A stretch of 64,000 bases of DNA, taken from positions 186,001 to 250,000 of IMG/VR virus record IMGVR_UViG_3300009158_000031; one strand, 5' to 3'. Position numbers and translations under genes: made by a program. Positions 23,899 to 49,152 of this stretch are shown here, one piece after another. Positions within the stretch are counted from its first letter, which is position 1; every line of letters starts with the position of its first letter. Below the pieces are notes generated by a model that saw nothing but the letters and a program-made list of their open reading frames with translations, ran no database searches and was not told where the DNA came from.

Positions 23899-24228
23899 AT
23901 GTATAATAACCGTAGAAAATCATCAATGAAGAATTTGTTACTAATTGGATTAGTCTTGTGGATTGCGTTGTTAGGGTTTGCTTGGTTTGCCGATCAAGGT
24001 GAATTAGTTATTATGAATCGTAAATATCTAAAAACTCAATTTACTTTGGATTCGATAAATATGGAACGCCAAAAATATATACAAACAATATCCGAATTAG
24101 AAGAAGATCTTCAAGATATACAAACTTCCATGAAAAAAACCGAAGATCAATTGATGCGATTGAATAAATTATATTGGATTGAAAAAAGTAAAAACGACAC
24201 AACTATAAAAACCGAAACAAATGAGTAG
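23899..24228 (+). CDS. Membrane-anchored coiled-coil protein
   Basis: N-terminal TM followed by heptad region. Confidence 0.55.
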   Translation: MYNNRRKSSMKNLLLIGLVLWIALLGFAWFADQGELVIMNRKYLKTQFTLDSINMERQKYIQTISELEEDLQDIQTSMKKTEDQLMRLNKLYWIEKSKNDTTIKTETNE

Positions 24229-24460
24229 ATACCAATCACAAAAAGACAATTTACAAATAGCCTATGGATTCGATCATGCATTAGGTTATTGGTACGACAT
24301 GTGGGATACCAACCAACGAGAATCCGATGGATCTCCTCGACATATAGAAGAAGGATCTTCTATGAGGCGAATGTCTAGAGATACATTCGCTAGTCGACTA
24401 ATGGAATTTCCCATATCACCTGATCATCTGCAAGCAATTGCACTAGATCTTCCCTTTTAA
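24221..24460 (+). CDS. Hypothetical protein
   Basis: AYGFDH motif; ORF in operon. Confidence 0.55.
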   Translation: MSRYQSQKDNLQIAYGFDHALGYWYDMWDTNQRESDGSPRHIEEGSSMRRMSRDTFASRLMEFPISPDHLQAIALDLPF

Positions 24461-24494
24461 CTCCTTCTCACCTTAAAAAATAAATACAACAAAA

Positions 24495-24884
24495 ATGGAA
24501 ACGACAACAATCGTAGTGTTAAGCGTAGCAAGCACTCTAGTAATCATTGGACTAATAGCAATGGTAAACGGGTTACGTAAGGCACACAAACAAATCACCC
24601 ACCTATTAGAAACTTCAAATTCAAGTATTCGCCATCATGAAGAAATTCACGATCGAATAAGTGAAGAGAATGAAAACCTGAATCGAATCATTTGCACTAT
24701 GGAAAATAACATCCATCGTCGTATAGATGAAACTCTACAACAAGCCGACCAGCAATATGCAAATATTTCTCGTCACGCTGAAGAAACCTGGAAAGAAAAT
24801 CAATCCGATTTAGATCGTCGATTTGATCGTCTTTATAATAAAATATACGAGGCATTACCTCAATTGAAAGAAAAAACTAATTAA
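24495..24884 (+). CDS. Membrane-anchored coiled-coil protein
   Basis: N-terminal TM, coiled coil ending LDRRFDRL. Confidence 0.65.
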   Translation: METTTIVVLSVASTLVIIGLIAMVNGLRKAHKQITHLLETSNSSIRHHEEIHDRISEENENLNRIICTMENNIHRRIDETLQQADQQYANISRHAEETWKENQSDLDRRFDRLYNKIYEALPQLKEKTN

Positions 24885-24905
24885 CAATTAATCGAGAAGG
24901 AGTTC

Positions 24906-24934
24906 AGAGAGGGTTCTAACGAACCCTCTCTTTT
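24906..24934 (+). terminator. Intrinsic terminator
   Basis: AGAGAGGGTTC-TAAC-GAACCCTCTCT then TTT. Confidence 0.8.
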
Positions 24935-24960
24935 CATATAAATTAAATATTCCTTATAAA

Positions 24961-25716
24961 ATGAAATCTATACTAATTGTAATTATGTTCTTGGCATCTA
25001 CTGCCTTTGCACAAGATACTTCAAAGATCAATCCAATCAAAATACAAATTGGTCTTGGCGGAAATTATACTGATGGAAATGCTAAAATACTTGGATTCAA
25101 TACCAACAATTCTATTACATATACCTCACTAAATCGTGAGTGGTCTTTGCTGCCATCATTTATTTACTCACAAGTACAACAAGATAATGAGTTCAAACCC
25201 AGACAGCGAGAACTATACATAACCGGTGCTGTTCAAGAAAGACGAGGTTCCGACAAAATTATTTCGGCTTTTGAACTAGAGACTTCATTAGTAAAACAAA
25301 TCCGATTAAGAACATCAATTGGTCTTGGATGGAGTTTCGATATAATTCGAACACCTAAAACTAAATTCATCATATCCGAAGCCGCTGTATATGAATCATA
25401 TTTATCAGATTTGATAATTGATAAAAACCTACAATCGCTTAGAGCATCTACTCGAATTAGATTTTCCACTAATGGGAAAGTCAATACCGATTTTGTAGCA
25501 CTTATACAACCTTCAATATGGAATGATCGAGGAGTTAGTGCAGCTAATAATACAAATTCTCGCATATCTGCAACGATTGCTATACCAGTTACCAAGAAAT
25601 TACAATTTGGAATAACCTCTACATTTATTGGATCTACCTATTCAAATTTCATTAATTCTGGAATCAATCCCGCTGACATAAATACAACTTTTTCACTCAT
25701 ATATAAAAATCTATAA
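24961..25716 (+). CDS. Outer-membrane beta-barrel protein (DUF481-like)
   Basis: Signal peptide (..STAFAQ), GGNYTDGN, alternating strands, aromatic near C-terminus. Confidence 0.7.
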   Translation: MKSILIVIMFLASTAFAQDTSKINPIKIQIGLGGNYTDGNAKILGFNTNNSITYTSLNREWSLLPSFIYSQVQQDNEFKPRQRELYITGAVQERRGSDKIISAFELETSLVKQIRLRTSIGLGWSFDIIRTPKTKFIISEAAVYESYLSDLIIDKNLQSLRASTRIRFSTNGKVNTDFVALIQPSIWNDRGVSAANNTNSRISATIAIPVTKKLQFGITSTFIGSTYSNFINSGINPADINTTFSLIYKNL

Positions 25717-25718
25717 AC

Positions 25719-25949
25719 ATGATAATATCAATAATTGGCTTAATCGCTACACTCATCACAATAGGATCATTCCTATTTAAAGAAATCAAAGACATTCGAA
25801 TGGTTAATTTCATTGGCTGTTTGGTTTGGTTATTATATGGATCGTTAAAGCTCGATTTTCCGGTCATAACGGTAAATTCTGCTATTGCTCTGATACACCT
25901 ATATTCATTTATAAAATCCGAAGATGATAACAATTCTATCGGTAGCTAA
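25719..25949 (+). CDS. Small membrane protein (YgjV/PQ-loop-like)
   Basis: IRMVNFIGCLVWLLYG...PVITVN. Confidence 0.6.
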   Translation: MIISIIGLIATLITIGSFLFKEIKDIRMVNFIGCLVWLLYGSLKLDFPVITVNSAIALIHLYSFIKSEDDNNSIGS

Positions 25950-26127
25950 TTTAGTTAATTATATTGTAATTGGTGCCATTTTGGCATTCATTTCCGATAT
26001 AACTATGAGATACATTATCAAAAAACCTGAACTAGAATTTACTAACGTCGAAAGATGTGCCATCATTGCGCTTTGGCCTATATACGTGGCAATCATTATA
26101 TTAGGAAATTCAAAATCAAAAAAATAG
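25924..26127 (+). CDS. Membrane protein
   Basis: Two TM helices, LWP motif. Confidence 0.55.
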   Translation: MITILSVANLVNYIVIGAILAFISDITMRYIIKKPELEFTNVERCAIIALWPIYVAIIILGNSKSKK

Positions 26128-26131
26128 AAAC

Positions 26132-26350
26132 ATGCTAAATTATTTCAAACAACCTAAAACCCGAGCTATCATTTCCACTATATTGGTAGTTGTGGGAACC
26201 ACTCTTTCCATCGAAGCTGCTCTATGGTTAGTATTCAATTATGGACGAGAGCTAATGGCCTTCACGGTTATTCTCGCTATGGCTTGGTTAAGTCGTAGTA
26301 TATACTTTTCGTATTTGGAAAAATATCGCAAAGAAAAAGAAACAAAATAG
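26132..26350 (+). CDS. Membrane protein
   Basis: Two TM helices. Confidence 0.55.
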   Translation: MLNYFKQPKTRAIISTILVVVGTTLSIEAALWLVFNYGRELMAFTVILAMAWLSRSIYFSYLEKYRKEKETK

Positions 26351-26356
26351 TCAATC

Positions 26357-26590
26357 ATGCAATATTATATAGGCATATTACCAGAAGATCGAGGTCGACT
26401 TAGATCCACGATAGAGTTTTTAAATGACAATCCCAATTGGCGATGGCAGGTTAAAGTCTTATCAGAATTTGACGATCCTGATGGATATTATACATTCCAA
26501 ATGGAAGGGAATGAGGAGACTTATCGACACTTTCTTCGACTCTCTACTAACGAAGGATTTGTCAAATCTCTTAATCATTATGAAGAGTAG
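26357..26590 (+). CDS. Hypothetical protein
   Basis: ORF in operon. Confidence 0.5.
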   Translation: MQYYIGILPEDRGRLRSTIEFLNDNPNWRWQVKVLSEFDDPDGYYTFQMEGNEETYRHFLRLSTNEGFVKSLNHYEE

Positions 26591-26837
26591 TTGGTTCGTT
26601 TATATAGTTCGTTGCTCTGATGGAACTCTGTATACCGGAATCACCGTTGACCTTCAAAAACGAGTGGCCTCTCACAACTCCAAGAAAGGAGCTAAATATA
26701 CTGCGACTCGAACTCCTGTCGAGTTAGTTTGGTCTCAACCTTCAGAAACGAGATCCACTGCCGCGAAAGAAGAGTGGAGAATAAAACAGCTTTCCCGTAC
26801 AGAAAAACTCGCCTTAATAGATAATCTTATATTATAA
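26580..26837 (+). CDS. GIY-YIG nuclease (UPF0213/YhbQ-like)
   Basis: WFVYIVRCSDGTLYTGIT...HNSKKGAKYT; start moved to ATG 26580. Confidence 0.9.
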   Translation: MKSSWFVYIVRCSDGTLYTGITVDLQKRVASHNSKKGAKYTATRTPVELVWSQPSETRSTAAKEEWRIKQLSRTEKLALIDNLIL

Positions 26838-26994
26838 TAATCTAGTACAGATCACTCCCTTGCAAGTAGAGTAAATAAAAAGTTTGCTCACTCTAAACAC
26901 ACTCTTCTAATATAATCTACTACATCTTATATAGGATAAACCGCTTTATATAGAAGGTAATACGCTATATAAGGTAATAATCTATATAGATAAC

Positions 26995-27240
26995 TCTCCT
27001 CCTCGTCTGACTAGTCGTGGTGTTGTGAGCGGAGAAATCCGGTAAGCCACGGAGGAAGCCGGTATTTGCAGATCCGCTTATAGTGACACCTTTTGTTTTC
27101 CGCATTCTCACAAAGATTTGCCGCATATACCAACGAGCCGTTAAGTACCGAGGAATCCATAATCGTAATGGCTCTCAATCACCCAGGGCTCGTTGCTAAC
27201 TCCCATCACCAAAGCTACTCCGTCCACAACCCGCCTACCC
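26995..27240. ncRNA. Putative structured non-coding element
   Basis: GC-rich intergenic island with several complementary stems (see findings). Confidence 0.4.
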
Positions 27241-27314
27241 TTATATAGTGATAATTGGATCCGGTGGTAATTCCGCCTTACCTTATATAAGGAATATTGA
27301 ATCCAGTAGCGATT
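27231..27314. repeat. Imperfect 42-bp tandem duplication
   Basis: CCGCCTACCCTTATATAGTGATAATTGGATCCGGTGGTAATT / CCGCCTTACCTTATATAAGGAATATTGAATCCAGTAGCGATT. Confidence 0.7.
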
Positions 27315-27318
27315 AAGA

Positions 27319-27380
27319 TGTTAATAACTTTCTCACAAAACATTTTTTTATTACAACCTTTTTTATTATATTTGTATATA
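27319..27380 (+). promoter_or_regulatory. Early-type promoter with DnaA-box-like element
   Basis: TGTTAATAACTTT...TTTTTTATT...TATTATATTTGTATAT. Confidence 0.75.
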
Positions 27381-27400
27381 CATAATAACTAATACACTAT

Positions 27401-27679
27401 ATGGAAGAACAAGAAGATTTTAATCAGGAACTCGATCCTGTACAAAAGGCCGAGTTAGAATTACAATATCAAGAAGAAATAGGAAAGGCCATGAGAAGTG
27501 CATTTGCTTATATAGAGGAAGATCTAGGCTGGGAGGCTTGGATCGAGAATCGAGTGATTGGTGACGCGGCCAAGAAGCGGAGAATCCTCGATAATATGAT
27601 GAAATGGTTTGCTTCTCCAGAGGTGGAGGAATATGAGAAATCCGCTCGCATCAAAAGGGCTATTGATACTCTCGTATAG
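27401..27679 (+). CDS. Acidic hypothetical protein with UVR-like EEYE motif
   Basis: EEYEKSARIK C-terminal motif. Confidence 0.6.
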   Translation: MEEQEDFNQELDPVQKAELELQYQEEIGKAMRSAFAYIEEDLGWEAWIENRVIGDAAKKRRILDNMMKWFASPEVEEYEKSARIKRAIDTLV

Positions 27680-27681
27680 GT

Positions 27682-27764
27682 TGTTAATAACTTTGTTAAT
27701 AAGTTTTGAAACAAATAGTAAAATAAATTTTTTTATTCCACAAATAAGTATTATATTTATATAT
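27682..27764 (+). promoter_or_regulatory. Early-type promoter with two DnaA-box-like elements
   Basis: TGTTAATAACTTTGTTAATAA...TTTTTTATTCCAC...TATTATATTTATATAT. Confidence 0.75.
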
Positions 27765-27791
27765 TATTTAATTAACTTAAAAAAGATCTAT

Positions 27792-28046
27792 ATGCAAATC
27801 AATCAAATTAAAACCGGTTCCTTTATTCGTAACAGCGGTGGATTTACCTTCCACGTAACACTTACCGAGAAGTTCGCTCACCTTCACCCTATCGATGATA
27901 ACACATCTACCTCAACGAAGGTACTACCTATAGCGGTATTCAATCAGTTAATTCGTAATCACAACTTCGTTACCGTTACCAATCCCAATAACGCACACGA
28001 AAGAATTCTTACTAAATCATATGGATCAAGATTATTAACACAATAA
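27792..28046 (+). CDS. Hypothetical early protein
   Basis: Start moved to ATG 27792, downstream of promoter. Confidence 0.55.
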   Translation: MQINQIKTGSFIRNSGGFTFHVTLTEKFAHLHPIDDNTSTSTKVLPIAVFNQLIRNHNFVTVTNPNNAHERILTKSYGSRLLTQ

Positions 28047-28108
28047 TGTTAATAACTTTCCCATCAAACATTTTTTTATACCAAAAAAAAGTATTATATT
28101 TATACTAT
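28047..28108 (+). promoter_or_regulatory. Early-type promoter with DnaA-box-like element
   Basis: TGTTAATAACTTT...TATTATATTTATACTAT; inverted copy TTATTAACA at 28032. Confidence 0.75.
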
Positions 28109-28142
28109 ATTTAAAAATCAAATAAAACAAAAAAAATCAATT

Positions 28143-28460
28143 ATGGCAAAATCATCTAGAGGCGGATTAACAGTTTACGATAAACAAGATGTGGTAATAT
28201 CACAATTCGCAAAAATCGTACGTAACGAACAATACAGAAAAGAACCAACATGGTTCGAACAACAGGTAATCGATTCTAAACAACGTACTGCGGATTATCA
28301 AAAACGTATGGTGAACAACCCACCTCAACCCCGTATCTCACACTATAATCCAGACAATATCTTAAATCGCACCAGACACTTATCTGCGGAAGATCGTAAA
28401 ATCGCAATCAAACAATTTCTTAAAGAAGAAAAGGCTGCTAATAATTTAATCAATCAGTAA
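28143..28460 (+). CDS. Hypothetical early protein
   Basis: First ORF after promoter. Confidence 0.6.
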   Translation: MAKSSRGGLTVYDKQDVVISQFAKIVRNEQYRKEPTWFEQQVIDSKQRTADYQKRMVNNPPQPRISHYNPDNILNRTRHLSAEDRKIAIKQFLKEEKAANNLINQ

Positions 28461-28480
28461 TCTCTAAATAAAAAAAACAT

Positions 28481-28804
28481 ATGTCAGCAAGACCACACTC
28501 CCTAAATGATGAATTACCTTCTAATCCAAATATTAGAAGAGATCAATACAAACGTATACTTGGTATTCTTAAAATACATCGTGATCGTCCTCAATTAGCT
28601 TTCGATCTTATAAGAGATTACGCTAAAGGTGTAGATAAGGTGAAAACCGTTTTCCTATACCCCAATGGTACTGGTGATATCCCAACCGAAATTCGAGTAG
28701 TTTCTGAAGGTTCACATACCGAATCTATGGCTACACAAATCATGACTACCGTTTATTCATTTCCTTTCGAACGTCCTGAAATCGTTGAACCACCCGTATT
28801 GTAG
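28481..28804 (+). CDS. Hypothetical protein
   Basis: ORF in operon. Confidence 0.55.
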   Translation: MSARPHSLNDELPSNPNIRRDQYKRILGILKIHRDRPQLAFDLIRDYAKGVDKVKTVFLYPNGTGDIPTEIRVVSEGSHTESMATQIMTTVYSFPFERPEIVEPPVL

Positions 28805-28866
28805 AATACATATAATAATAAACCACTCCACTCTCACACAGACGGTGGACTAAAAACAACCAATCA

Positions 28867-29955
28867 ATGACAATATCTCAAAAGCAATTTAGTGACTTCC
28901 GAGAAGACGCACTAAAAAATCAACCACTCCGCAAGGAAATCGCACTAGCCGATATTCGTTTCGTCACTATGGATGCAATCGAATATGCCGGTTTAAACTT
29001 TGGACTTGCTCGTCCTGCACTTAAAGATCTAATGCGTATATTAGGTGTAAACATGAATATCGAATCTCGCTTATCTGAATCTATCGGTGAGGATGGTGCG
29101 AGGAACTTCCTTAATGGTCTAAGATCTGCACTATCTAAATCAGCCGGATCTATTATCTTATCGGTTACACCAGATCGCATCATTCAACGTATCACTAAAG
29201 GTGGAAAAGAAACTTCACTCTTTACTGCACCTACCTACTTCAATACAGTAGATCGCTTTATGAATACCAACTCCGGTATGGAAATAAAGGATATGCACTT
29301 CAATCGCGAAACAGGTGGAATATCGCTCTCTGCGGCTTCACCCAAATCAGAATTTAACGTGGGTAACTTTAACGATGAGGTTTTCCATGGAGGATTAAAT
29401 CTCTCTATCACTGCCGATGGAATTAAAGCCGCTCCTTATCTACACCGTCTAGTGTGTACGAACGGAATGGTAACACGTTCTTTCGAGGAATCCTTTAATC
29501 TTAATCGCAACACCACTGAAAGTTGGACTTCCTTCTGGCAGAATCTAGAAAGAATCGAACACTCTGGATTTCAACCCATCGCCTTTACCAACAAGGTACT
29601 CGCTGCGAAAAACACTACTGCTTCTTTCGCTGAGATGGAAAGATCAATGAACCTCATCCTAGGTAATTCAAAATGTGATCTAGACAATCTACCCCAATTC
29701 ATCAATTACCGTCCGACCTTCAATCGTCTACACTCTACAGGAATCGATACCCTGAAGTTAACACCAGGACAGAAACGCAATCTACGTACTGGCTTAACCA
29801 TGTGGGATTGCATTAATGGAGTTACCGATTTTGCCTCACACAATTATGGTTTTGAAAAAACAGCTAACTGTGATCGCCACTTACAGTTACAAGCTGGTGA
29901 TATCCTCACTAAGGACTTCGACACACAAAACCTAATCCTGAATCAACCTTACTAA
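28867..29955 (+). CDS. DUF932-like phage protein
   Basis: RLVCTNGM motif and C-terminal TMWDCINGVTDFASH. Confidence 0.6.
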   Translation: MTISQKQFSDFREDALKNQPLRKEIALADIRFVTMDAIEYAGLNFGLARPALKDLMRILGVNMNIESRLSESIGEDGARNFLNGLRSALSKSAGSIILSVTPDRIIQRITKGGKETSLFTAPTYFNTVDRFMNTNSGMEIKDMHFNRETGGISLSAASPKSEFNVGNFNDEVFHGGLNLSITADGIKAAPYLHRLVCTNGMVTRSFEESFNLNRNTTESWTSFWQNLERIEHSGFQPIAFTNKVLAAKNTTASFAEMERSMNLILGNSKCDLDNLPQFINYRPTFNRLHSTGIDTLKLTPGQKRNLRTGLTMWDCINGVTDFASHNYGFEKTANCDRHLQLQAGDILTKDFDTQNLILNQPY

Positions 29956-30006
29956 GAGTAAGGAACTGCGAGTGGAGAAAACCACTCTAATTTGATAATA
30001 CCACTA

Positions 30007-30032
30007 AGGCTGCTCACTAGAGTGGCCTTTTT
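30007..30032 (+). terminator. Intrinsic terminator
   Basis: AGGCTGCTC-ACTA-GAGTGGCCT then TTTT. Confidence 0.65.
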
Positions 30033-30424
30033 GTGGTTTACACAGCGAGACTGCCCTATTACTCACCTTTACCACCTAGAAGAGACTAGATACCTTCTAG
30101 TCTCACCTAATAAGGGCCTGTACAGATCTAGACCAGCAAAACAACATCCTACTAGATCTAGATCTTAACAAGAAGAGCCTAGATAGACTAGATGAGTACT
30201 AGCAGTGTACTAGTAGGATCTATTAAGGCTAGAAGCAGACTAGAAGAGCTCAATATATCCACATATAGGACAGAAGAGTGCTATAAAGACTCATATATAC
30301 TCATTATATCACCGATAGATCATCTAGAAGCCGCTGAGGTGAGCTATAGGGACTAGAAAGTCAAAAAAAGGTCACAAAAAGCCAAAAAGGATCACTTTTA
30401 GCCAAAAAGGATCAAAAAGGCCAC
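30017..30424. repeat. CTAG-rich and A-tract repeat region (candidate origin/packaging/terminus)
   Basis: 15 CTAG in about 340 bp, several 9-11 bp apart; GCCAAAAAGGATCA twice (30381, 30401). Confidence 0.6.
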
Positions 30425-30976
30425 ATGTGCTCCTCGTAATCCATGTCTTGTCCGCGTTAACGTCCCGTGGAAGTCCAGTCCTGGCTAGGGCCCATGAAAT
30501 TCCGGACATTTTTGACCCTCGAAACTTTGGGCCGGAAATAAGGCGACGCACATCCCACTCTATACGGAAAGCCCTTTCTGGTAACGCGAGTAAGAGAAGC
30601 CCAAAGGCCTTTTTAAAAAAATTTTCCAGACTATATAGGATCTCTCGAAACTCATTGACTAATATATAGAGTAGCCGGTGAGTCTTTTTAAACCTTTCTG
30701 ACTCTTTGTTTTGCTCGAAGGAGAAGGTACTGACAGAGTGAAGACGGCTACTTTGTTTACAGTAATCTGTTAATAGTAAACTCTTACCCGACGCAAACGA
30801 CGAGGGGCCATCCAGACTTCTCTGATGGTTTATTTCGCATCCCTCTTTTATACTCTCGGTATAAATTCGAGACCTCGATTGAACTGCCGATACCGCGACT
30901 CGCATCTGATAACCACGATAAATAAACCATATACTCGATCTTACCGGCGAATCGTGTAAGTCATATAAAAACTAAT

Positions 30977-31303
30977 ATGGAAATGAAAACTGTAATGTAC
31001 TGTTCAACTATTGAAGATGCACGAGAGTGTATTGAAGATGATACGACGATATTTCCGCTTCTCGAAAGAGCTCTGATTACCATGTGGAAGACAACCTCTC
31101 ACTCTGAGGAAGTTCTAGAAATCCGTTGTATGGATGTAGGTGCTTCTATGTGGGTAACTCTCCGTCGAAGTGAGTGTGATGAAGTATGGGAGAAGATCAT
31201 CACTTGGAGAAGTGGAAGAGAAGAGTGGGAAGAACTGACGGTACTTAAAGATATTCGAGATGAGTGGTTCAACTCTAAGAAGGTTGTGGAGCCAGTCCAT
31301 TGA
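30977..31303 (+). CDS. Hypothetical protein
   Basis: ORF after CATATAA motif; EEWE motif. Confidence 0.6.
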   Translation: MEMKTVMYCSTIEDARECIEDDTTIFPLLERALITMWKTTSHSEEVLEIRCMDVGASMWVTLRRSECDEVWEKIITWRSGREEWEELTVLKDIRDEWFNSKKVVEPVH

Positions 31304-31409
31304 AAAAAAAAAGCCCTCCAGCGTTCAAACTCTGAGTTTCAGGAATAAATAGAAATATAAACGAACAAAAAAGCGCGCAGCGGCTTCCACCTCTGAGTAC
31401 CAAGAATAA

Positions 31410-31787
31410 ATGAAATCAATACCTACATATCACGAATTCCTTAATGAGACCGTCTCATTTAATACCGATACTACTGGTCGTGAAGATTGGGATGATGATC
31501 TAAAGAAACATTCTAGAGATTTTACTCAATCTATAGTAATAATGAGTCCGATGGATTTCTTGAAGAGAGTTCAATATCACCGATTTGAGATTAATAAATC
31601 TAAAGTGGCTAATTATGTTAAAGAATTTCGTGGTAATGTCAAAGGAATTCCAGCACCAACCATGTGGTTCTCTGATAAGTTTCAATACGATAAAGGACTT
31701 GCTCCTGCTTTTCATGATGGATCTCATCGCATGCTAGCTCTACAAGAAGTAGGGATACGAGAAGTTCCGGTTAAAATTATATACTAA
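31410..31787 (+). CDS. ParB/Srx-like domain protein with N-terminal tag
   Basis: MKSIPTYHEFLNE; MSPMDFL...HDGSHRMLALQEVGIREVPV. Confidence 0.7.
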   Translation: MKSIPTYHEFLNETVSFNTDTTGREDWDDDLKKHSRDFTQSIVIMSPMDFLKRVQYHRFEINKSKVANYVKEFRGNVKGIPAPTMWFSDKFQYDKGLAPAFHDGSHRMLALQEVGIREVPVKIIY

Positions 31788-31788
31788 G

Positions 31789-32409
31789 ATGAAAAACATT
31801 CAAACATACGAAAGCTTCTTAAATGAACTTCGACATTCAAAAGAGTTTTTAATAGACCTATTTTCTAAAATGGATATTTTAGATAATGATGTATACAAAA
31901 ACATTTTAATCCATTACATTGAACAACCACAAAATTTAGAAAAACAAGAGTTCATTGATTTAGTTTCATGGTTGATCCAGAATAAAAACAAGTACAGTGA
32001 AGTACTAAAGCCTAAAAATGGATATGCATACAGAGGAACTTCAATAACTCCTGATATGTTTCATAAATTAAAAAATGGATTATCAAAAAAAGAAGGTGGT
32101 ATAAGCATATTTAACTTTCCTTATACCAGCGAATCAGAAGCACAAAGTTGGACATATGATTATAAAGTAGCAATGAGGTTTGCGGATAAAGGTCTTTTAA
32201 ATAACCCTAGATTAGAAAAAGGAGCTAGACCAGCTATTTTAAGAGCTAAGATAGATGATACATTTGTAGGTAATCCTAAGTTGACTGGTCCCATAGCTGA
32301 CCGATTAAGTCTGAAGTCCGAAAAGGAAATATTTCATTTAGGGAATTCTATAAAAGATGCTGAATGGATGATATTCTCAGCCGATATAGAATTAGGAAAA
32401 TTTAATTAG
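31789..32409 (+). CDS. ADP-ribosyltransferase-like protein with N-terminal tag
   Basis: MKNIQTYESFLNE; R-S-E pattern AYRG...QSWTYDYKVAMRFA...SEKEI. Confidence 0.6.
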   Translation: MKNIQTYESFLNELRHSKEFLIDLFSKMDILDNDVYKNILIHYIEQPQNLEKQEFIDLVSWLIQNKNKYSEVLKPKNGYAYRGTSITPDMFHKLKNGLSKKEGGISIFNFPYTSESEAQSWTYDYKVAMRFADKGLLNNPRLEKGARPAILRAKIDDTFVGNPKLTGPIADRLSLKSEKEIFHLGNSIKDAEWMIFSADIELGKFN

Positions 32410-32419
32410 TATAAAGACT

Positions 32420-32818
32420 ATGAAATCAATATCGACATATGATGAATTCTTAAATGAGTCTATTCGTGCAGAAGAGGCTTATCGAGATACAGGAGCTATT
32501 CAAACCGTCATTGATGGAAAGAGAGATATGGGATTCATTACCATCAAATCATCGGTTGATGTGAGCGAAAAAGAATTCTGGACATTGGTGAAGATACACG
32601 ATCTGAGTACCATTCACCTATCTGGAAATGAATATGATGCCTATATCTATTATCATAAAGGAGCCGAGCGAGGTGCCAGAGAGCTAGCGAAGATTGCTAA
32701 CAAATACGGTGGATATCTATCACATGAAGCGACTGAACGAGAATCTCGTCGAATAGGCGAACTTCTAGGTTACGATCGACGAGACATAGATGATTATATA
32801 AAGAAAAACTACAAATAA
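32420..32818 (+). CDS. Tagged hypothetical protein
   Basis: MKSISTYDEFLNE; IGELLGY motif. Confidence 0.65.
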   Translation: MKSISTYDEFLNESIRAEEAYRDTGAIQTVIDGKRDMGFITIKSSVDVSEKEFWTLVKIHDLSTIHLSGNEYDAYIYYHKGAERGARELAKIANKYGGYLSHEATERESRRIGELLGYDRRDIDDYIKKNYK

Positions 32819-32975
32819 TGGATAATGGAAAACGTAATCAATTAAAACCTGTGAGAATCGCTGATGTTAATAAGTTGGTGGCTAATGATCCGAGGATTCT
32901 TATTAAAGTTAATCATAAAGGTGGAAGTGGAGTTTCTCTTATGAACACTAATAAAATTAAAGACCGAAAATAAGA

Positions 32976-33680
32976 ATGAGAAAGATAGCCTTATATGAGC
33001 AATGGATAAATGAAATTGGTGATTCATCAGCCAAGCCATTCAAATGGAGTAGTCCTGTTATCGCTGTTAATATGAAGAGATGGATAGATGATTGTATCGA
33101 AGGAGCTGCAGACAAGAAGATGAGTGGAACTCAAGAAGATATTTACTATAAAACTAAAACATTTAGATATGAATTCCGATCGGATGTGACTAATACAAAT
33201 TATCATGTACACATCGGTGGATTTGTTGGTAGAAATATCTGGATTGCCTTTCAAGGAGAAAAACCTAAAGATTGGGTTGGATATCATATAATTGCCGGAT
33301 TAGGATTTGGTGTTGAAGGAGATTTCGATAAAACTACTAATCTTAATGAACAATTCCGAGTAATGGCAACCGTTACCGAATGTGCCATTGATTTTCTACA
33401 ACGATTCTTGGATGATGGACGAATCAAGATTGATAAATTTCACATGAAACCTAAGGCCGATCACGAAGAACAAAAAGGAATAGATTCTCGTCGAGCTAAA
33501 CTATATGCCCCTTATATTAAAGCCGCATTCCGCAAACTCAAAACGAAGAAGGATTATTACATAGATCAAGAGGCAGATGGATTCGTTCTTCATTTCGGAA
33601 AGGTCATAATGAACTCTCCTTATTCCACTTCAGTATTAGCATCAACCTTTGAAAATGAAGAATCCAATGAAATCAATTAA
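32976..33680 (+). CDS. Tagged hypothetical protein
   Basis: MRKIALYEQWINE; FRVMATV...RRAKLY motif. Confidence 0.65.
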   Translation: MRKIALYEQWINEIGDSSAKPFKWSSPVIAVNMKRWIDDCIEGAADKKMSGTQEDIYYKTKTFRYEFRSDVTNTNYHVHIGGFVGRNIWIAFQGEKPKDWVGYHIIAGLGFGVEGDFDKTTNLNEQFRVMATVTECAIDFLQRFLDDGRIKIDKFHMKPKADHEEQKGIDSRRAKLYAPYIKAAFRKLKTKKDYYIDQEADGFVLHFGKVIMNSPYSTSVLASTFENEESNEIN

Positions 33681-38750: not shown

Positions 38751-41700
38751 ATGAGAAACAAACATATGAAAAATCCTATTTTAATTTGCCTGTTACTATT
38801 TAATTTAATTGTAATTGGACAAACAACACCTAAAGAAAGATACATAAACAATTCTGATTATCTTTCTAAAAACTCCTTAGTCGATTACAAAAGCTATTAC
38901 GGAGATTCCATACAAGGATTCGACGAAGCAGCTATGAAAGTTGAACTACTAAGACGAAACGTTTTTGGTTCAGAATACATCAACTACATTGCTCTTGTAA
39001 AAAGAGAATGGGTAAATCAAAAGTACGGTATCAAACCTGTACTACCTATCAATTCAAACAACCGACCTATTGGAGGTCCTAACTCAGTTAATTCACCTGG
39101 TAATGCTTGTGTGAATGAAGACTTTGAGCTTACTGCACCTGGAGCTTATAATGGAATGAATTCTGTTTTAGGATGGACAATTCAAAGTGGACAAAATACT
39201 TCCAATATCTGTTGTGGAAATCCTACATATGGTGCTGGCTGTGTTGCTAATCCTATTGCTAATTGGAATGCAGGTAGTCCTGAATTTTCTATTGTTGCTA
39301 CTCCAATACTACCTGCTCCTAGTTGTGCTAATCCTCCTGGATTTAGTATTGACAATGTATCAATACCTAATTCACCTCTTGGCGGTAACCGAGTTGCAAG
39401 ACTACAAAACTCATGTCCAACCGGTTTGATGACTCGAATTATGACACAATTTCCTGTTTCAAATTCTAATACCTTATTTCAATTTTGTTATGCTGGTTCA
39501 TGGGATGGTGTTCATGAATGTTGTGGACAACCTGCTTTTAGAATCGATATGTATAATTGTACAGGTTCATTAATCCCAATACCATGTGCCAATGTAAGCC
39601 TAACTCCTTCCGGACAATCTTGTCAAAGTGGAGTTCCTGGATATCAGGTAACCAGTGGAGTTTCATGGGTTAATTGGCAAACAAAATATATTGACTTAAC
39701 TCCTTATATTGGTCAGTGTATTAGAATTGTGGTAACTTGCTCAGATTGTTCTTATTCTGGACATCATGGAACTGCTTATTTTGATGCAAGATGCGGTGGT
39801 CAATTAGTTGGAGTTGGATTAGGTGGAGTTGGTGGAAACATTGCAGGACCTGTTAGTTATTGTGCTGGTTCAAATCAAGCTATTATTGCCGCACCATTGG
39901 GATACTCGTCATATCAATGGATATCTCCTATCACAGGAACAATTCCTGCTAATGCAGGAGGTACAGCTCCAGTATTAACCATAAGTCCAGTAGTTGCAGG
40001 TTTAGTGTATACAGTTCAGTTAAACTCACCATCAGGGTGTTCTTATATTGCAACCAATACAATCATGCCTACTCTTGTAAACATTGCAGGTATTGGTTCA
40101 GGCACAAGTTGTGCAGGAGGATCAAGTGGAACGGGTACTGTTCAAGGTAATGGCAGTGGCACAGGATACAATTATACTTGGGTAAATTCAAATAATGCTG
40201 TAGTTGGTACCTCAGCAACAGTAAGTGGACTGCTTCCAGGAACATATAGCGTAACTATAACTGGTCTTGGCGCTGCAGGATGTGGTTCAGCAACATCAAC
40301 TATATCAATAGGAGTTGGAATACCTCAAATGCAAAATCTATTAAAACCGTATTGTGGTTCTCAAGCCTATTTAAGTGTAACGGGTAATAGTGTTCAGTGG
40401 TCTACCAACAATACAGCTATCTCCGCTCCATTAGGAGTGGCAATGGGATACACAGTAAACAATCCAGTACAGGCTTCAGTATACACAGTTACCTATACTT
40501 CATTACAAAATTGTAATGAAGCAGCTTCATTCACCCTAATACCATCTCCGCCGGGCAGTATATCATTACTAACTACTTCTGTTTGTTTAAACTCGACAAA
40601 TGGCAGTGGAACTATTAATCTAACTCCTGCATCTGGTTCTCCTCCTGGAGCTAATTCATATTCAGTATGGAATTCTAATAATACTCCGGTTTACAATTCA
40701 TCATTGTCTCCTACTAATCAAAATAATTATTTGTTTGGAAACATGGGAACCGGTAGTTATCAAGTAAGAGTATTTGATGGTTCCTGTGCATACACAACTT
40801 CCTTTATTATACCTACTCATGTATTTTCTCCTACATTAAGTCCAACCTCAACAACTCTATGTCCTGGTGGAGGTATTGCAGCCGGAGTAGTATTTAGTAT
40901 TCCACCATCATTATCTCAATACACTTACTCTTGGACACCTAATATCTTTTTAGCAGGAAACACTCAACAATCAACGATTATCATACCAAATCTTGCAGTA
41001 GGTACGCAATCAAATATAACTTACTCAGTTGTAATTACTCCTACTGCTATTAATTGTCCGATGACTCGTACATTAAATTTATGGGCAATCAATCCACCAA
41101 TTCCAACTATTACTGCAATACCTAATATGTGTAACAATATGCTTCCATATCAAGTATTGGCTAATCCCAGTGGTGGTATCTTTACCGGAGTTGGAATGAG
41201 TACATTAGGTTTAATCTCTCCGACTGCTTCACTATTAGGAATCAATAACTTTACATATGCCATTTCAATTAGTACTTGCGCATCATCTAATACTGGAAGT
41301 TATCAGGTATCATATTTCAATACTTCATCATTAAGCTCTTCAATAAATCCTATATGTTCTACTAATTCAACAATAAATCTTATGACTATTGTTCAGAATA
41401 CCTTAGGATCTTGGTCAGGTAATTATATAACGAATAACATATTCAATCCAGCAAATCTAAATGGAGTATACTCATTAACCTACAATAATTTATCAACACC
41501 AAATCCTACAGTATGTCCTTCATCTACTCAAATGAATATATCGGTTACTAATACAATAATTCCGACTATTGCAAATTCCAATCCATTCTGTACGAATGCC
41601 TCCTCTTTTGTATTGATCGCTAATCCAAATGGAGGAATCTGGTCTAACAATTCTGCAGTGAGCGGTTTAGGTATTGTAACTCCTTCATTGACATCTCCTA

Positions 41701-43718: not shown

Positions 43719-43721
43719 AAT

Positions 43722-43782
43722 TGTTAATAACTTTCCCGTAATAAATTTTTTTATTCCAAAAAGTTTTATTATATTTGTATAT
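43722..43782 (+). promoter_or_regulatory. Early-type promoter with DnaA-box-like element
   Basis: TGTTAATAACTTT...TTTTTTATTCC...TATTATATTTGTATAT. Confidence 0.75.
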
Positions 43783-43802
43783 ACAATTTAAACAAATATA
43801 CT

Positions 43803-43997
43803 ATGGAAAATAATTTTGAAGTATCCGATCTTGAATTACTCACAACATCGGAATTAAAAACTCTACTAATCGATTTATTCGATGGTAATGCAGGTGAAAT
43901 TCTTTATGGTTTTCGAGAAATGGGAATTACCAAAGATGCTAATCTTAAATCGGCAATAATCCGATACATCATTCGTAAACAACCCATCAATGCATAA
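43803..43997 (+). CDS. Hypothetical early protein
   Basis: First ORF after promoter. Confidence 0.55.
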   Translation: MENNFEVSDLELLTTSELKTLLIDLFDGNAGEILYGFREMGITKDANLKSAIIRYIIRKQPINA

Positions 43998-44310
43998 ACG
44001 AAGAAGCGATCGTAACCATCTCATCTACAAAATAGAAAATCTCTCAACCGGAGAATTCTATATAGGAGTTACAGTCGTAACCGGTAGAGCATATCTTAAA
44101 TCTCTTAAATCTCGATGGAAGCGACATATCTATAAAGCAATGGTGCTTCGTGAAGAATGGTTATTTCCAAAAGCGATTCGCGAATATGGCGAATCTCAAT
44201 TTAAACCTGAGATTATCGAAATTGTACGTGGTAAATCTACCGCATTCGGAAGAGAATCTCAACTTATTAACGAAATCCGACCAGCATACAACACACGAAT
44301 GAAATGTTAA
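43990..44310 (+). CDS. GIY-YIG nuclease-like protein
   Basis: LIYKIEN...FYIGVT...RWKRH...AIREYG...E..LI...P.YN. Confidence 0.8.
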   Translation: MHKRRSDRNHLIYKIENLSTGEFYIGVTVVTGRAYLKSLKSRWKRHIYKAMVLREEWLFPKAIREYGESQFKPEIIEIVRGKSTAFGRESQLINEIRPAYNTRMKC

Positions 44311-44387
44311 TAACTTTTTTACATTTAGCCAAAAATAAGTTTCAAAAAATTTTTTTATTCCAATAAAAAGTATTATATTTGTTATAT
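44305..44387 (+). promoter_or_regulatory. Early-type promoter with DnaA-box-like element
   Basis: TGTTAATAACTTT...TTTTTTATTCC...TATTATATTTGTTATAT. Confidence 0.75.
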
Positions 44388-44420
44388 CAATTTAATATTA
44401 ATCTTTTAAACTCAAAAAAT

Positions 44421-44732
44421 ATGAAATCTAAATCAAGTATCGAAAAAATTGCTGCAATTCAATCATTAGTATCGAAATCATTTAACATCGAACTACCTAA
44501 ATTACTTTCACCATCTCGTACTGGTGAAATTGCATACATTCGCCAAATATCAATGTATCTATGCAGATTCAACACAACCGCTTCTCTTAAAATAATTGCG
44601 GCCGAACATAATCGTACTAATCACGGTACCGTTATCCATGCTTCCGAAGTAATTGGATTCGATTATCGCAAAAACGAAAAAGTACGTAATCAAATCATCG
44701 CATTAGAAACCCAAATTAAAACAATAGCATAA
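44421..44732 (+). CDS. Stand-alone DnaA C-terminal (domain IV) helix-turn-helix protein
   Basis: LLSPSRTGEIAYIRQISMYLCR...SLKIIAAEHNRTNHGTVIHA matches DnaA domain IV (R.....RQ.AMYL...SL..IG..F..RDHTTV.HA); start at 44421. Confidence 0.85.
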   Translation: MKSKSSIEKIAAIQSLVSKSFNIELPKLLSPSRTGEIAYIRQISMYLCRFNTTASLKIIAAEHNRTNHGTVIHASEVIGFDYRKNEKVRNQIIALETQIKTIA

Positions 44733-44734
44733 TC

Positions 44735-44989
44735 ATGAAAGTACACGAAAAAGCAAAATTATACGATTCACTCATAAAAGATTATGAGGAACTTATCACC
44801 GAAATGCAAAATCATTCAAACTCTATTAAAGAAATTGAAACTCGAGAAGATCTTAAAGAAATGAAGGAAAATAACGTTTCAACTTATTATCCTCTTTTAG
44901 CCGGAACCTATCAAGGTTCTAACTTTGGTTTAGATCTTAAAATCTCAAGAGCTCAATCTAATCTTAAATGGTATAAAGGCATAAAATAA
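44735..44989 (+). CDS. Hypothetical protein
   Basis: ORF in operon. Confidence 0.55.
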   Translation: MKVHEKAKLYDSLIKDYEELITEMQNHSNSIKEIETREDLKEMKENNVSTYYPLLAGTYQGSNFGLDLKISRAQSNLKWYKGIK

Positions 44990-44991
44990 AT

Positions 44992-46194: not shown

Positions 46195-46369
46195 TCAAGC
46201 AACCTTTATTACTGAATCTGACCTGTGATTTTTAACATATAACCTTTATCTAAGGTGATCGAGGAAATAATATAGTTCTTCAGGCAGATTAGGTAATTCA
46301 AGGTTACTCCATCATACTCATATAATTTATACATTTATCTATAGAATTACGACTAATCAAAAACAAAAT

Positions 46370-46834
46370 ATGGCAAAGACTAAAAAACAAATCGTTGAGC
46401 TTACTCCGGTTGAACGAGTATTCGCTGCATTCATGGAAGATTTCAATGATACTGAATTACAAGAAAGACTAGATGGATTTGAAAGAACTCTTAAATCTCT
46501 AAAGGCTCGTTACAATGAATTAGTTCCTAATTTGAATGATGCTTTGAGAGATCAAACAATTTTAAACAAAATGATTTTGGATTCGGCTAAAATGAGTTTC
46601 ATTAATAACGATGCTTTCAAGAGACTTAAGATTGTGGATTCATATCTAGACGAGAACATGGAACTTGCCAATGATCTTAAAAGTAAAATACAATCCGAAG
46701 AAGATCTTATCCGAAAATATAAAGAGAATTCACATGATCGTCTTTTTCGATGGTGGCAATCTATTAAAGCCGTAGAACCTAACACTATCCCTTGGTTAGA
46801 ATGGAAAATCATGTATGATTCCAAGATAATTTAA
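46370..46834 (+). CDS. Coiled-coil hypothetical protein
   Basis: Heptad-rich ORF after CATATAAT. Confidence 0.6.
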   Translation: MAKTKKQIVELTPVERVFAAFMEDFNDTELQERLDGFERTLKSLKARYNELVPNLNDALRDQTILNKMILDSAKMSFINNDAFKRLKIVDSYLDENMELANDLKSKIQSEEDLIRKYKENSHDRLFRWWQSIKAVEPNTIPWLEWKIMYDSKII

Positions 46835-46837
46835 AAA

Positions 46838-46898
46838 TGTTAATAACTTTCCATCAATAAATTTTTTTATTCCACTTATTTGTTTTATATTTGTATAT
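46838..46898 (+). promoter_or_regulatory. Early-type promoter with DnaA-box-like element
   Basis: TGTTAATAACTTT...TTTTTTATTCCAC...TTATATTTGTATAT. Confidence 0.75.
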
Positions 46899-46917
46899 AC
46901 AATTTAAAACAATATAT

Positions 46918-49151: not shown

Positions 49152-49152
49152 T

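What the first reader, a model, noticed from the sequence alone, without database searches (positions are those of the whole stretch)
30017..30640. Helically phased CTAG array, A-tract repeats and a GC-rich core in a 1-kb non-coding gap
Seen: 15 CTAG in 30017-30356, with runs spaced 9-11 bp (30076/86/97; 30179/88/99/210; 30229/40). Also a near DnaA box ATATCCACA (30255), then repeated CAAAAAG(G) units including GCCAAAAAGGATCA twice, then an unusually GC-rich stretch and TTTTTAAAAAAATTTT. Inference: bent, protein-wrapped site such as a replication origin, pac/terminus or injection-control signal, or an array of decoy sites for a CTAG-recognising host enzyme. It separates an early cluster from the tagged-cargo cluster.
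Basis: partly seen in the sequence, partly recalled or inferred. Interest (0 to 1): 0.6.

Follow-up and report, generated by a model that had tools for sequence, protein, structure and literature searches.

The report
Conserved repeat-bend-core DNA module in huge phage
A 1-kb non-coding gap in an uncultivated 254-kb freshwater phage holds a conserved DNA module (a short-repeat array rich in CTAG/GACTAG, a strongly bent A-tract block and an invariant 90-bp core) with no RNA detected over it at low depth, which looks like a protein-assembly site such as a replication origin, though its function is untested.

Summary
There are 15 CTAG in 340 bp, against about 0.9 expected, and no other cluster like it in the 254-kb genome. 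The gap is 1,021 bp with no conserved ORF. The A-tract block is the most curved DNA predicted in the 64-kb window.

The near-DnaA box occurs at chance frequency and is not conserved. Helical phasing is only locally significant (p about 0.02) and is absent in two relatives. The first CTAG sits in the terminator of the upstream gene.

The same layout recurs in five phage lineages whose flanking proteins are 47-89% identical:
- DUF932-like gene and terminator
- fast-evolving short-repeat array
- phased A/T tracts
- invariant unique core
- A/T box
- CATATAAT-type promoter and the next gene

The array motif differs by lineage (GACTAG, CTAGTA, GACTGT). One lineage lacks the upstream array but keeps the core. 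The core has no conserved RNA fold and no conserved ORF. In three lake metatranscriptomes, RNA contigs stop at the terminator and resume at the next gene.

Best reading: a cis-acting nucleoprotein assembly site, most likely an iteron-type replication origin of this phage, which has a T4-like replisome (about 0.35). Rivals are a packaging or terminus site, a long-range regulatory region, and an RNA gene. A CTAG decoy array is unlikely.

The parts
28867..29955 (+). Upstream flanking gene, 362 aa, a distant DUF932-like protein. It is conserved next to the module in every relative.
   Evidence: ORF. 122 homologues at 27-94% identity. 17 of 23 homologues give weak PF06067 hits. RNA contigs cover it in three metatranscriptomes. 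The model has pLDDT 83 and no PDB fold match by Foldseek.
29969..30039 (+). Two 3'-end hairpins of the upstream transcript: 29969-29986, and the terminator hairpin 30006-29 followed by a T tract. The first CTAG (30017) sits in the second hairpin.
   Evidence: Terminator scan. RNA contigs of three runs end at 29988, 29994 and 30037, and a circular unitig joins 30037 to 29697. Hairpin 1 keeps pairing through two compensatory changes in L018.
30076..30356 (.). Short-repeat array with 14 CTAG, mostly WCTAGW, including 5 GACTAG/CTAGTC. It contains runs at 9-11-bp spacing and the inverted repeat 30082-30104 (9-bp arms, 5-nt loop).
   Evidence: The sequence is poorly conserved but the motif density is kept in L007, L018, L009 and L020/L038.
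30262..30270 (+). CATATAGGA motif inside the array, conserved in position 130-190 bp upstream of the core. A second copy lies at 30631-30639.
   Evidence: Alignment. The motif is rare in the genome: 5 TATATAGG, of which 3 are intergenic. It is present in the L038 array.
30357..30420 (.). Phased A/T-tract block (A7, A5, A5, T4, A5, A5 at about 10-11-bp spacing), forming an intrinsic bend.
   Evidence: Tract positions and the curvature maximum of the whole window. Equivalent A/T-tract blocks precede the core in L007, L018, L009, L020/L038, L035 and L036.
30440..30535 (.). Invariant GC-rich core, single copy in the genome. It includes the palindrome CGTTAACG (30455-62), CCCATG..TTCCGGACA (30491-30508) and GACCCTCGAAAC (30514-25).
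   Evidence: Nearly 100% identical in L007 and L018, and its invariant blocks are kept in L009, L010, L016, L020, L035 and L036. Unique in the genome. No conserved ORF. No consensus RNA fold on either strand. Fold z-scores are +1.0 and +1.1.
30598..30640 (.). Conserved A/T box: a short GGCC palindrome, then an A-run/T-run followed by CCAGAC and TATATAGG.
   Evidence: Unique in the genome. Conserved in L007, L018, L009 (two copies), L010, L035 and L038, with a variant in L036.
30672..30750 (+). Two-hairpin element resembling the Rfam CyVA-1 sRNA motif, with a GAAGGAGAA loop. It is found only in the window, L007 and L018 lineage.
   Evidence: RF02965 scores 37.3 bits against a gathering score of 41.4, E 1.7e-6. 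Hairpin 2 keeps pairing through changes on both sides in L007. It is absent from L009, L010, L035 and L036. No RNA contig covers it.
30776..30803 (.). Further block conserved with L007, function unknown.
   Evidence: Alignment.
30962..30969 (+). CATATAAA, a class-2 promoter-like motif 8 nt upstream of the start codon of the next gene.
   Evidence: The same CATATAAT/W motif precedes many genes of this genome, including the upstream 362-aa gene. It also precedes the homologous downstream gene in L009, L010, L035, L036 and L038.
30977..31303 (+). Downstream flanking gene, 108 aa, unknown function. It is syntenic in relatives.
   Evidence: ORF. Homologues at about 30% identity lie directly after the gap in L009, L010 and L038. 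RNA contigs resume at 31008.

Best explanation
The gap carries a cis-acting DNA module that works as double-stranded DNA, not as a gene or a stable RNA. It has three parts. The first is an array of short degenerate binding sites: GACTAG and other WCTAGW units in this phage, and other short motifs in its relatives. The second is a block of phased A-tracts that bends the DNA. The third is a unique invariant core of about 90 bp.

The most likely mechanism is this. A sequence-specific protein, not identified here, coats the array. The static bend folds that complex onto the core. The core is the site where the actual event takes place. I think that event is most likely initiation of replication, making this an iteron-type origin for the phage's T4-like replisome, comparable to T4 oriE.

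Shown: the anatomy, its uniqueness, its conservation across lineages, the turnover of the array, the absence of a coding or RNA-fold signal, and the absence of RNA contigs over it.

Inferred: that a protein binds the array, that the bend juxtaposes array and core, and that the outcome is replication initiation.

My confidence that it is a protein-bound cis-acting DNA element of some kind is about 0.7. My confidence that it is specifically an origin is about 0.35, and that is the figure in the confidence field.
For: - **Density and uniqueness.** 15 CTAG lie in 340 bp against about 0.9 expected, and the cluster is unique in 254 kb. All 7 intergenic GACTAG copies of the genome lie in this array (5) or in the neighbouring gap (a GACTAGTC palindrome counted on both strands).
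- **Conserved architecture.** The order terminator, array, A/T tracts, core, A/T box, promoter, next gene is kept in five lineages whose flanking protein is 47-89% identical.
- **Iteron-like turnover.** Array sequence turns over while motif density is kept. GACTAG is the top enriched hexamer in four lineages.
- **Bend.** The A-tract block is the most curved DNA predicted in the window.
- **Core.** It is nearly invariant and single copy. It has no conserved ORF, no consensus fold, and folds worse than shuffled sequence.
- **RNA.** In three metatranscriptomes, RNA contigs cover the upstream gene, end at the terminator, and resume only in the next gene. A DNA run covers the array continuously.
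- **Phage type.** The phage encodes split PolB, UvsX, a DnaB-like helicase, SbcCD and topoisomerase II. T4 oriE has evenly spaced iterons that are conserved in related phages (PMC3016281).
- **Gap size.** This is one of the two largest non-coding gaps in a tightly packed genome.
- **Skew.** GC skew of the flanking genes changes sign at the gap. This is weak evidence, because skew is noisy genome-wide.
Against: - There is no AT-rich unwinding element. The gap is GC-richer than the genome, and its only pure A/T stretch is 16 bp.
- The near-DnaA box is a chance match.
- No initiator protein was identified. The genes just downstream are not conserved between lineages.
- One lineage (L010, L016) lacks the upstream array and the A-tract block. 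It keeps the core and has two or three 40-bp repeats, some carrying GACTAG, downstream of it.
- Helical phasing is not general.
- GC3 skew is too noisy to map an origin.
- The RNA evidence comes from low-depth assembled contigs, which show presence and not absence. Short or transient RNAs would be missed.
- There are no marker-frequency or binding data.
Confidence: 0.35

Rival explanations
1. Packaging recognition site or genome terminus (pac, cos or repeat boundary). The small terminase subunit would bind the repeat array, the bend would wrap the DNA, and the conserved core would be cut.
For: The layout resembles lambda cosB-I1-cosN, SPP1 pacL with its phased A-tracts, and the P1 pac site with its clustered short palindrome-containing hexamers. 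That comparison rests on my own knowledge, not on a test. Short metagenomic contigs of relatives that carry the upstream gene all end inside the gap (L007, L008, L016, L020 and two ENA contigs). My rough estimate of the joint chance is about 0.01.
Against: The large terminase gene lies about 88 kb away, at genome 127-129 kb. Five assemblies of the window's own strain span the gap, as does the 246-kb contig of the L020 lineage. Contig breaks are expected anyway at a hypervariable array bordered by conserved blocks. Contig ends of G000 and G001 fall in collagen-like repeats and say nothing about termini. No read-end data could be obtained.
Confidence: 0.12
2. Long-range transcriptional control region, acting as an enhancer, silencer or insulator. 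A regulator would bind the array, the bend would loop it onto a promoter in or after the core, and this would time expression of the downstream gene block.
For: The module sits between a working terminator and the promoter of the next gene. No class-1 promoter occurs between 28.05 kb and 43.7 kb of the window, so the downstream 13-kb block depends on signals at or after the gap. An upstream site array followed by a bend and a promoter is a known layout, for example in enhancer-dependent promoters (my own knowledge).
Against: The downstream gene has its own CATATAAT-type motif right at its start. Dozens of other genes with that motif have no such apparatus. The core lies about 500 bp from that promoter in this phage. 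No RNA contig starts in or after the core. The core shows no sigma-54 or class-1 or class-2 promoter consensus.
Confidence: 0.18
3. One or more non-coding RNA genes. The GC-rich island would encode a stable RNA, and the CyVA-1-like hairpins an sRNA. The array would be promoter-upstream or transcribed repeat RNA.
For: GC-rich islands in AT-rich phage genomes are often RNA genes. Relatives carry tRNA genes a few kb upstream in the same region. The CyVA-1 match has E 1.7e-6, and L007 shows compensatory changes. The stretch 30640-30980 folds slightly better than shuffles (z -1.65).
Against: The core has no consensus structure and its fold z-scores are positive. The CyVA-1 match is below Rfam's gathering score and is confined to one lineage. 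No RNA contig covers 30038-30943 in three RNA runs that do cover both flanking genes.
Confidence: 0.15
4. Decoy or methylation-sensing array for an enzyme that recognises CTAG, such as a restriction enzyme, a methyltransferase or a SeqA-like reader.
For: The repeated unit contains a 4-bp palindrome with A/T on both sides in 85% of copies. Clusters of methylatable palindromes are known at E. coli oriC and the P1 pac site (my own knowledge).
Against: CTAG is not counter-selected elsewhere in the genome (observed/expected 1.01). The recurring unit is the asymmetric GACTAG. Lineages L035 and L036 keep the module with only 4-6 CTAG and use other motifs. No DNA methyltransferase of families PF01555, PF02086 or PF00145 is present in the record, which is estimated 83% complete.
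Confidence: 0.03
5. No function for the array itself. It would be a hypervariable, slippage-prone leftover of tandem repeats lying next to a functional core.
For: The array sequence diverges fast. One lineage lacks it. The 10-11-bp spacing could come from a degenerate tandem unit.
Against: Independent lineages keep 12-17 copies of related motifs at the same place, upstream of the same bend and core, despite sequence turnover. The genome is otherwise tightly packed, at about 8% non-coding.
Confidence: 0.07

Closest known systems
Bacteriophage T4 oriE iteron cluster
   Same: It is a cluster of evenly spaced short direct repeats in a non-coding stretch of a phage with the same type of replisome. 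It is conserved at syntenic positions in relatives, and its role is still unproven (PMC3016281).
   Different: The T4 repeats are 12-nt direct repeats next to an early promoter and the repEA/repEB genes. Here the units are shorter (6-8 bp), occur in both orientations, and are followed by a strong A-tract bend and an invariant GC-rich core. No promoter or rep gene was found next to them.
Iteron-type origins of plasmids and lambdoid phages (lambda ori, R6K gamma, P1 oriR)
   Same: They combine an array of initiator-binding repeats, intrinsic or protein-induced bending, and an adjacent unique initiation region. Iteron sequences co-vary with lineage.
   Different: Those origins have a clearly AT-rich unwinding element and an adjacent or overlapping initiator gene. 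This gap is GC-richer than its genome, and no initiator is identified.
Packaging sites: lambda cosB/cosN, SPP1 pacL, P1 pac
   Same: They have repeated terminase-binding sites, bent DNA and a conserved cleavage core. P1 pac is built from clustered hexamers that contain a 4-bp palindrome.
   Different: Those sites lie in or beside the small terminase gene. Here the terminase gene is 88 kb away, and long contigs run through the site.
Centromere-like and operator arrays bound by ribbon-helix-helix proteins (TP228 parH, pSM19035 omega sites, MetJ boxes)
   Same: They are arrays of very short (4-8 bp) degenerate boxes in direct and inverted orientation, read cooperatively.
   Different: No partition genes or ribbon-helix-helix protein could be tied to the array. 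A weak Arc-like hit at 31789-32409 (E 0.003) is not conserved in relatives.
Rfam CyVA-1 sRNA motif (RF02965)
   Same: The element at 30672-30750 matches the whole 77-position model, with both hairpins and the conserved GAAGGAGA loop. CyVA-1 was itself found by scanning large intergenic regions (PMC5737381).
   Different: The score is below the gathering threshold. It covers only a small, lineage-restricted part of the gap and is not the CTAG array. No expression was seen.

Membership tests
Iteron-type replication origin | Array of repeated short binding sites, conserved as a feature among relatives | tested here: met
   GACTAG/CTAG-type units are enriched 50-100-fold and kept in five lineages.
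Iteron-type replication origin | Adjacent AT-rich DNA unwinding element | tested here: not met
   The gap is 45-65% A+T in a 67% A+T genome, and the only pure A/T run is 16 bp.
Iteron-type replication origin | Cognate initiator protein that binds the repeats | tested here: inconclusive
   No candidate emerged from Pfam or PHROGs scans of the neighbours. The upstream DUF932-like protein is always adjacent but has no known fold or function.
Iteron-type replication origin | Replication starts there (copy-number peak, autonomous replication) | not testable with these tools
   Only assembled contigs of public runs were available.
DnaA-dependent origin | Clustered, conserved DnaA boxes | tested here: not met
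   There is one 8-of-9 match, at chance frequency, and it is not conserved in L007 or L018.
pac/cos packaging site or genome terminus | Physical DNA ends or read-start pile-ups at the site | not testable with these tools
   No raw reads were available. Long contigs span the site, and short contigs of relatives break in it. Both patterns are ambiguous.
pac/cos packaging site or genome terminus | Location in or beside the terminase genes | tested here: not met
   TerL lies at genome 127,064-128,854, and the site at 216,017-216,640.
Structured non-coding RNA (for the GC-rich core) | Conserved secondary structure with covariation, and transcription | tested here: not met
   RNAalifold gives -1.2 and -3.0 kcal/mol. 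Fold z-scores are +1.0 and +1.1. There is no Rfam hit on the core and no RNA contig.
Rfam CyVA-1 (for 30672-30750 only) | Score at or above the family gathering threshold | tested here: not met
   37.3 bits against 41.4. The match spans the full model length, and L007 shows compensatory changes.
Methylation-site cluster (oriC GATC / P1 pac type) | A cognate methyltransferase, and the same palindrome kept in relatives | tested here: not met
   No DNA methyltransferase families are present in the genome. L035 and L036 keep the module with little CTAG. A host enzyme is not testable.

The most novel reading that the evidence does not exclude
The module is a dedicated wrapping site. Phased kinkable CTAG steps together with phased A-tracts would spool about 350 bp of DNA around a phage-encoded oligomer or histone-like protein and present the invariant core. 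This would mark a single landmark on a genome of about 250 kb, one that nucleates an event not yet described for huge phages. Examples would be a unique origin that works without an AT-rich unwinding element, a genome-anchoring or segregation site, or the start point of ordered genome processing. It would be a new class of cis-element shared by a clade of freshwater huge phages.
Probability: 0.1. Interest if true: 0.75.

Novelty: new member of a known kind. Interest (0 to 1): 0.42.

Why it matters
Cis-acting sites such as origins, packaging signals and regulatory landmarks are essentially unmapped in uncultivated huge phages. Those genomes are known only from metagenomes. This module is easy to recognise, single copy, and conserved across several lineages. 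If it is the origin or a packaging signal, it gives a handle for three things: following replication in coverage data, building shuttle or reporter constructs once a host is found, and finding the protein that reads the repeats. The lineage-specific motif turnover next to an invariant core is also a clean natural experiment on how a binding-site array co-evolves with its reader. If it proves to be an ordinary origin, the result is useful annotation rather than new biology.

Tried and rejected
- **Public phage genomes.** Megablast and blastn of the region found nothing. The only tblastn hit, LR756508 at 23% identity, has no gap or array.
- **Rfam.** At gathering thresholds only two distant tRNAs appeared. 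The permissive scan gave only the sub-threshold CyVA-1 match and nothing in relatives.
- **ORFs in the gap.** The 177-aa minus-strand ORF and the 80-aa plus-strand ORF are rejected as genes, because stops interrupt them in relatives.
- **A/T box as a general promoter.** Rejected, because it is unique in the genome. TATATAGG is also too rare for that role.
- **Second CTAG cluster at genome 61 kb.** It is coding and only mildly enriched.
- **GC3 skew as an origin mapper.** Too noisy to use.
- **Genome ends.** The 'direct terminal repeat' of record G001 is a 69-bp overlap inside collagen-like repeats. G000 also begins and ends in such repeats.
- **Metagenome records behind L009, L010, L018 and L019.** They are not held for genome searches.
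- **Pattern scan of metagenome contigs.** Three unrelated GC-rich contigs (L017, L021, L022) came up as chance matches and were not used further.
- **Upstream DUF932-like protein.** Foldseek against the PDB found no significant match, and a profile search of PDB sequences found nothing.
- **Literature.** A search for CTAG arrays in phage origins gave nothing relevant.
- **Unavailable DNA.** Two look-ups of close relatives and two of distant ones returned no DNA because the sample files are too large.

Full report
**Context**

The window is bases 186,001-250,000 of a 254,393-bp IMG/VR virus record. The record has 33% G+C, and about 297 of 304 ORF-based gene calls lie on the plus strand.

PHROGs scans show a contractile-tailed phage with a T4-like replication and recombination set:
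- split family-B DNA polymerase, UvsX, a DnaB-like helicase, SbcCD, topoisomerase II, NAD ligase and ribonucleotide reductase
- portal, protease, major head protein and tail sheath
- the large terminase at 127-129 kb

Identical copies occur in several lake metagenomes. No cultivated relative exists in the phage collection.

Two promoter-like motif classes are spread over the genome. Class 1 is a 65-bp element present about 27 times. It contains a TAnnTTTG box, which I read, from my own knowledge, as a Bacteroidota-type -7 element. Class 2 is a short CATATAAT/W motif just upstream of many start codons.

**The observation**

All 15 CTAG positions and the quoted spacings are correct. CTAG is at expectation in the window as a whole (165 observed, 164 expected), so 15 in 340 bp is about 17-fold over expectation. 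No other palindromic tetramer is enriched there. No other place in the genome comes close.

The gap between the 362-aa gene (28867-29955) and the 108-aa gene (30977-31303) is 1,021 bp. It is one of the two largest non-coding stretches in a genome that is about 92% coding. The two ORFs inside it are not conserved.

The A-tract block is real.

Four corrections are needed:
- The CTAG at 30017 belongs to the terminator hairpin of the upstream gene.
- The near-DnaA box is a chance-level match (24 found, 23.8 expected) and is not conserved.
- Helical phasing is only modestly significant here and in the close relative L007 (p about 0.02 each). It is absent in two more distant arrays.
- The enriched unit is more specific than CTAG. 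Positions -1 and +1 are A or T in 85% of copies. The asymmetric hexamer GACTAG or its complement occurs five times in the array, against 0.06 expected. All seven intergenic copies of that hexamer in the genome lie in this array or in the neighbouring gap. The copy at 27009 forms the palindrome GACTAGTC and is counted on both strands.

**Comparative anatomy**

The upstream protein has 122 homologues in metagenomes. I fetched their contexts and scanned for the conserved core. This gave five lineages with the same layout:
- the window with L007 and L018 (flank protein 89% identical)
- L020/L038 (54%)
- L009 (53%)
- L035 (51%)
- L036 (47%)

The order of elements is always the same:
1. DUF932-like gene
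2. terminator
3. an array of short repeats, 250-550 bp long
4. a block of phased A/T tracts
5. an invariant core of about 90 bp
6. a variable spacer
7. an A-run/T-run box ending in CCAGA
8. a CATATAAT-type motif
9. a homologue of the 108-aa gene

Between the window and L007 or L018, the core and the stretch 30600-30805 are nearly identical. The array has diverged almost completely in sequence but keeps its motif density.

The array motif differs by lineage. GACTAG dominates in the window, L007, L018, L009 and L036. CTAGTA dominates in L020/L038, which carries 17 CTAG. GACTGT dominates in L035, which has only four CTAG.

A sixth lineage (L010, L011, L016) has no upstream array and no A-tract block. 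Its terminator is followed almost at once by the core, and in L010 a GIY-YIG-like ORF is inserted between them. This lineage has two or three 40-bp repeats downstream of the core, some containing GACTAG.

More distant homologues of the flanking gene (42% identity and below) have no gap at all.

**What the core is not**

No reading frame is open across the lineages. RNAalifold finds essentially no shared structure on either strand. The sequence folds worse than its shuffles. Its defining words are single copy in the genome. The conservation is therefore at the level of primary sequence, including the palindrome CGTTAACG. That is what a protein-recognised DNA site looks like.

**Transcription**

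Contigs of three lake metatranscriptomes were laid on 28000-33500. They cover the upstream gene and end at 29988, 29994 and 30037, which is at the terminator. One run contains a circular unitig joining 30037 back to 29697, which marks an RNA 3' end there.

None of the three runs has any contig between 30038 and 30943. RNA contigs reappear inside the downstream gene. A DNA run from another sample covers 29394-30767 at 100% identity.

These are low-depth assembled contigs, which show presence rather than absence. Short or transient RNAs cannot be excluded. Within that limit, the array, the bend and the core are not part of an abundant transcript.

**Interpretation**

Together these features describe a cis-acting nucleoprotein assembly site:
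- a conserved, rapidly turning-over array of short sites in both orientations
- a strong static bend
- a unique invariant core, unstructured as RNA and with no detected transcript

I rank a replication origin first (about 0.35). The phage has a T4-type replisome that needs origins early in infection. The gap is one of the few places with room for one. Iteron arrays whose motif drifts with lineage are typical of origins. T4 oriE offers a direct precedent: evenly spaced short repeats, conserved in relatives, and still of unproven role. The sign of the GC skew of the flanking genes also changes at the gap, but skew is too noisy across this genome to count for much.

The main weaknesses are three. 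There is no AT-rich unwinding element. No initiator has been identified. One lineage lacks the array.

**Rivals**

*Packaging or terminus site (0.12).* It fits the layout of repeats, bend and core, and it fits the tendency of short contigs of relatives to end in the gap. Against it, the terminase gene is 88 kb away, and long contigs span the site in six assemblies. Breaks at a hypervariable stretch are expected in any case. Contig ends of the long records fall in collagen-like repeats and are uninformative.

*Long-range regulatory region (0.18).* This is possible because the module lies between a terminator and the next promoter, and no class-1 promoter serves the following 13 kb. However, the next gene has its own ordinary class-2 motif, and no transcript start was seen.

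*RNA gene (0.15).* This survives mainly for the stretch 30640-30800. There, a full-length but sub-threshold match to the CyVA-1 sRNA motif shows compensatory changes in L007. That element is restricted to one lineage and is not the array.

*CTAG decoy or methylation switch (0.03).* This is unlikely. CTAG is not avoided elsewhere, the conserved unit is asymmetric, relatives use other motifs, and no DNA methyltransferase is encoded.

*Functionless repeat debris next to a functional core (0.07).* This cannot be fully excluded.

**Novelty and verdict**

The feature is real and highly non-random. It is conserved as an architecture across a clade of uncultivated freshwater huge phages, and it matches nothing in Rfam or the phage collection.

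Its kind is familiar: repeats, a bend and a core forming a protein-assembly site. I therefore class it as a new member of a known kind. Its exact function is open, and the decisive data are read-level coverage and read ends, 5'-end mapping and binding assays. I could not obtain any of these.

Noticed in passing
window 27318-27399, 27677-27784, 28042-28127, 43722, 44305, 46838, 47418, 52681, 63204 and about 18 more places in the genome: A highly conserved promoter-like element of about 65 bp (TGTTAATAACTTT, a spacer, an A/T run, then TATTATATTTGTATATAC) precedes about 27 genes. It contains TAnnTTTG, the Bacteroidota-type -7 box, which hints that the host is a Bacteroidota bacterium.
   Followed up: partly
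many starts, e.g. window 28805-28866, 30962-30969; genome 7572, 83829, 128909, 165672: A second promoter-like motif, CATATAAT/W, lies 10-40 nt before many start codons, including structural genes. It may be the counterpart of the T4 late promoter TATAAATA.
   Followed up: partly
window 26838-27400: A sister non-coding gap lies 3 kb upstream. It has four TATATAG-type motifs at about 20-bp spacing, the palindrome GACTAGTC at 27009, a GC-rich stretch of about 300 bp and a 42-bp tandem duplication (27231-27314). Relatives carry tRNA genes in the equivalent region. There is no Rfam or tRNA hit here.
   Followed up: partly
window 30672-30750: A full-length but sub-threshold match to the Rfam CyVA-1 sRNA motif (37.3 against 41.4 bits), with a Shine-Dalgarno-like GAAGGAGAA loop. 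L007 shows compensatory changes. It would be a phage copy of a motif described from cyanobacteria.
   Followed up: partly
window 29697-30037: One metatranscriptome contains a circular 341-nt unitig joining the terminator 3' end (30037) back to 29697 inside the upstream gene. It could be a circularised RNA fragment or a library artefact. The phage encodes an RNA ligase at 53118-54221.
   Followed up: no
L010 7132-7710 (ENA scaffold, relative at 50% identity): A GIY-YIG-like homing-endonuclease ORF is inserted between the terminator and the conserved core in one relative. A sister contig (L016) lacks it.
   Followed up: no
window 32420-32818: A 132-aa protein gives a weak, sub-threshold match to the NleE cysteine-methyltransferase effector family (PF20798, E 7e-5, 22.9 bits against a cut-off of 27).
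   Followed up: no
window 38751-43718: A 1,655-aa protein has no PHROG match at E <= 0.001 (Pfam not scanned). It closes the 13-kb gene block that follows the gap.
   Followed up: no
genome 1-350 and 252002-254393; G001 ends (L039, L040): The long contigs of two lineages both begin and end in collagen-like Gly-X-Y repeat genes. The 'direct terminal repeat' assigned to G001 is a 69-bp overlap inside such repeats and not a real terminal repeat.
   Followed up: yes
window 28867-29955: The DUF932-like protein next to the module has an enzyme-like set of invariant residues (E171, R194, C197, N199, D321, H325). It gives a confident model (pLDDT 83) with no PDB fold match by Foldseek, and it is among the better-covered phage genes in lake metatranscriptomes.
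   Followed up: partly
window 24000-31000 and 40000-50000: Two stretches have negative GC skew although their genes are on the plus strand like the rest. The first ends exactly at the gap.
   Followed up: partly
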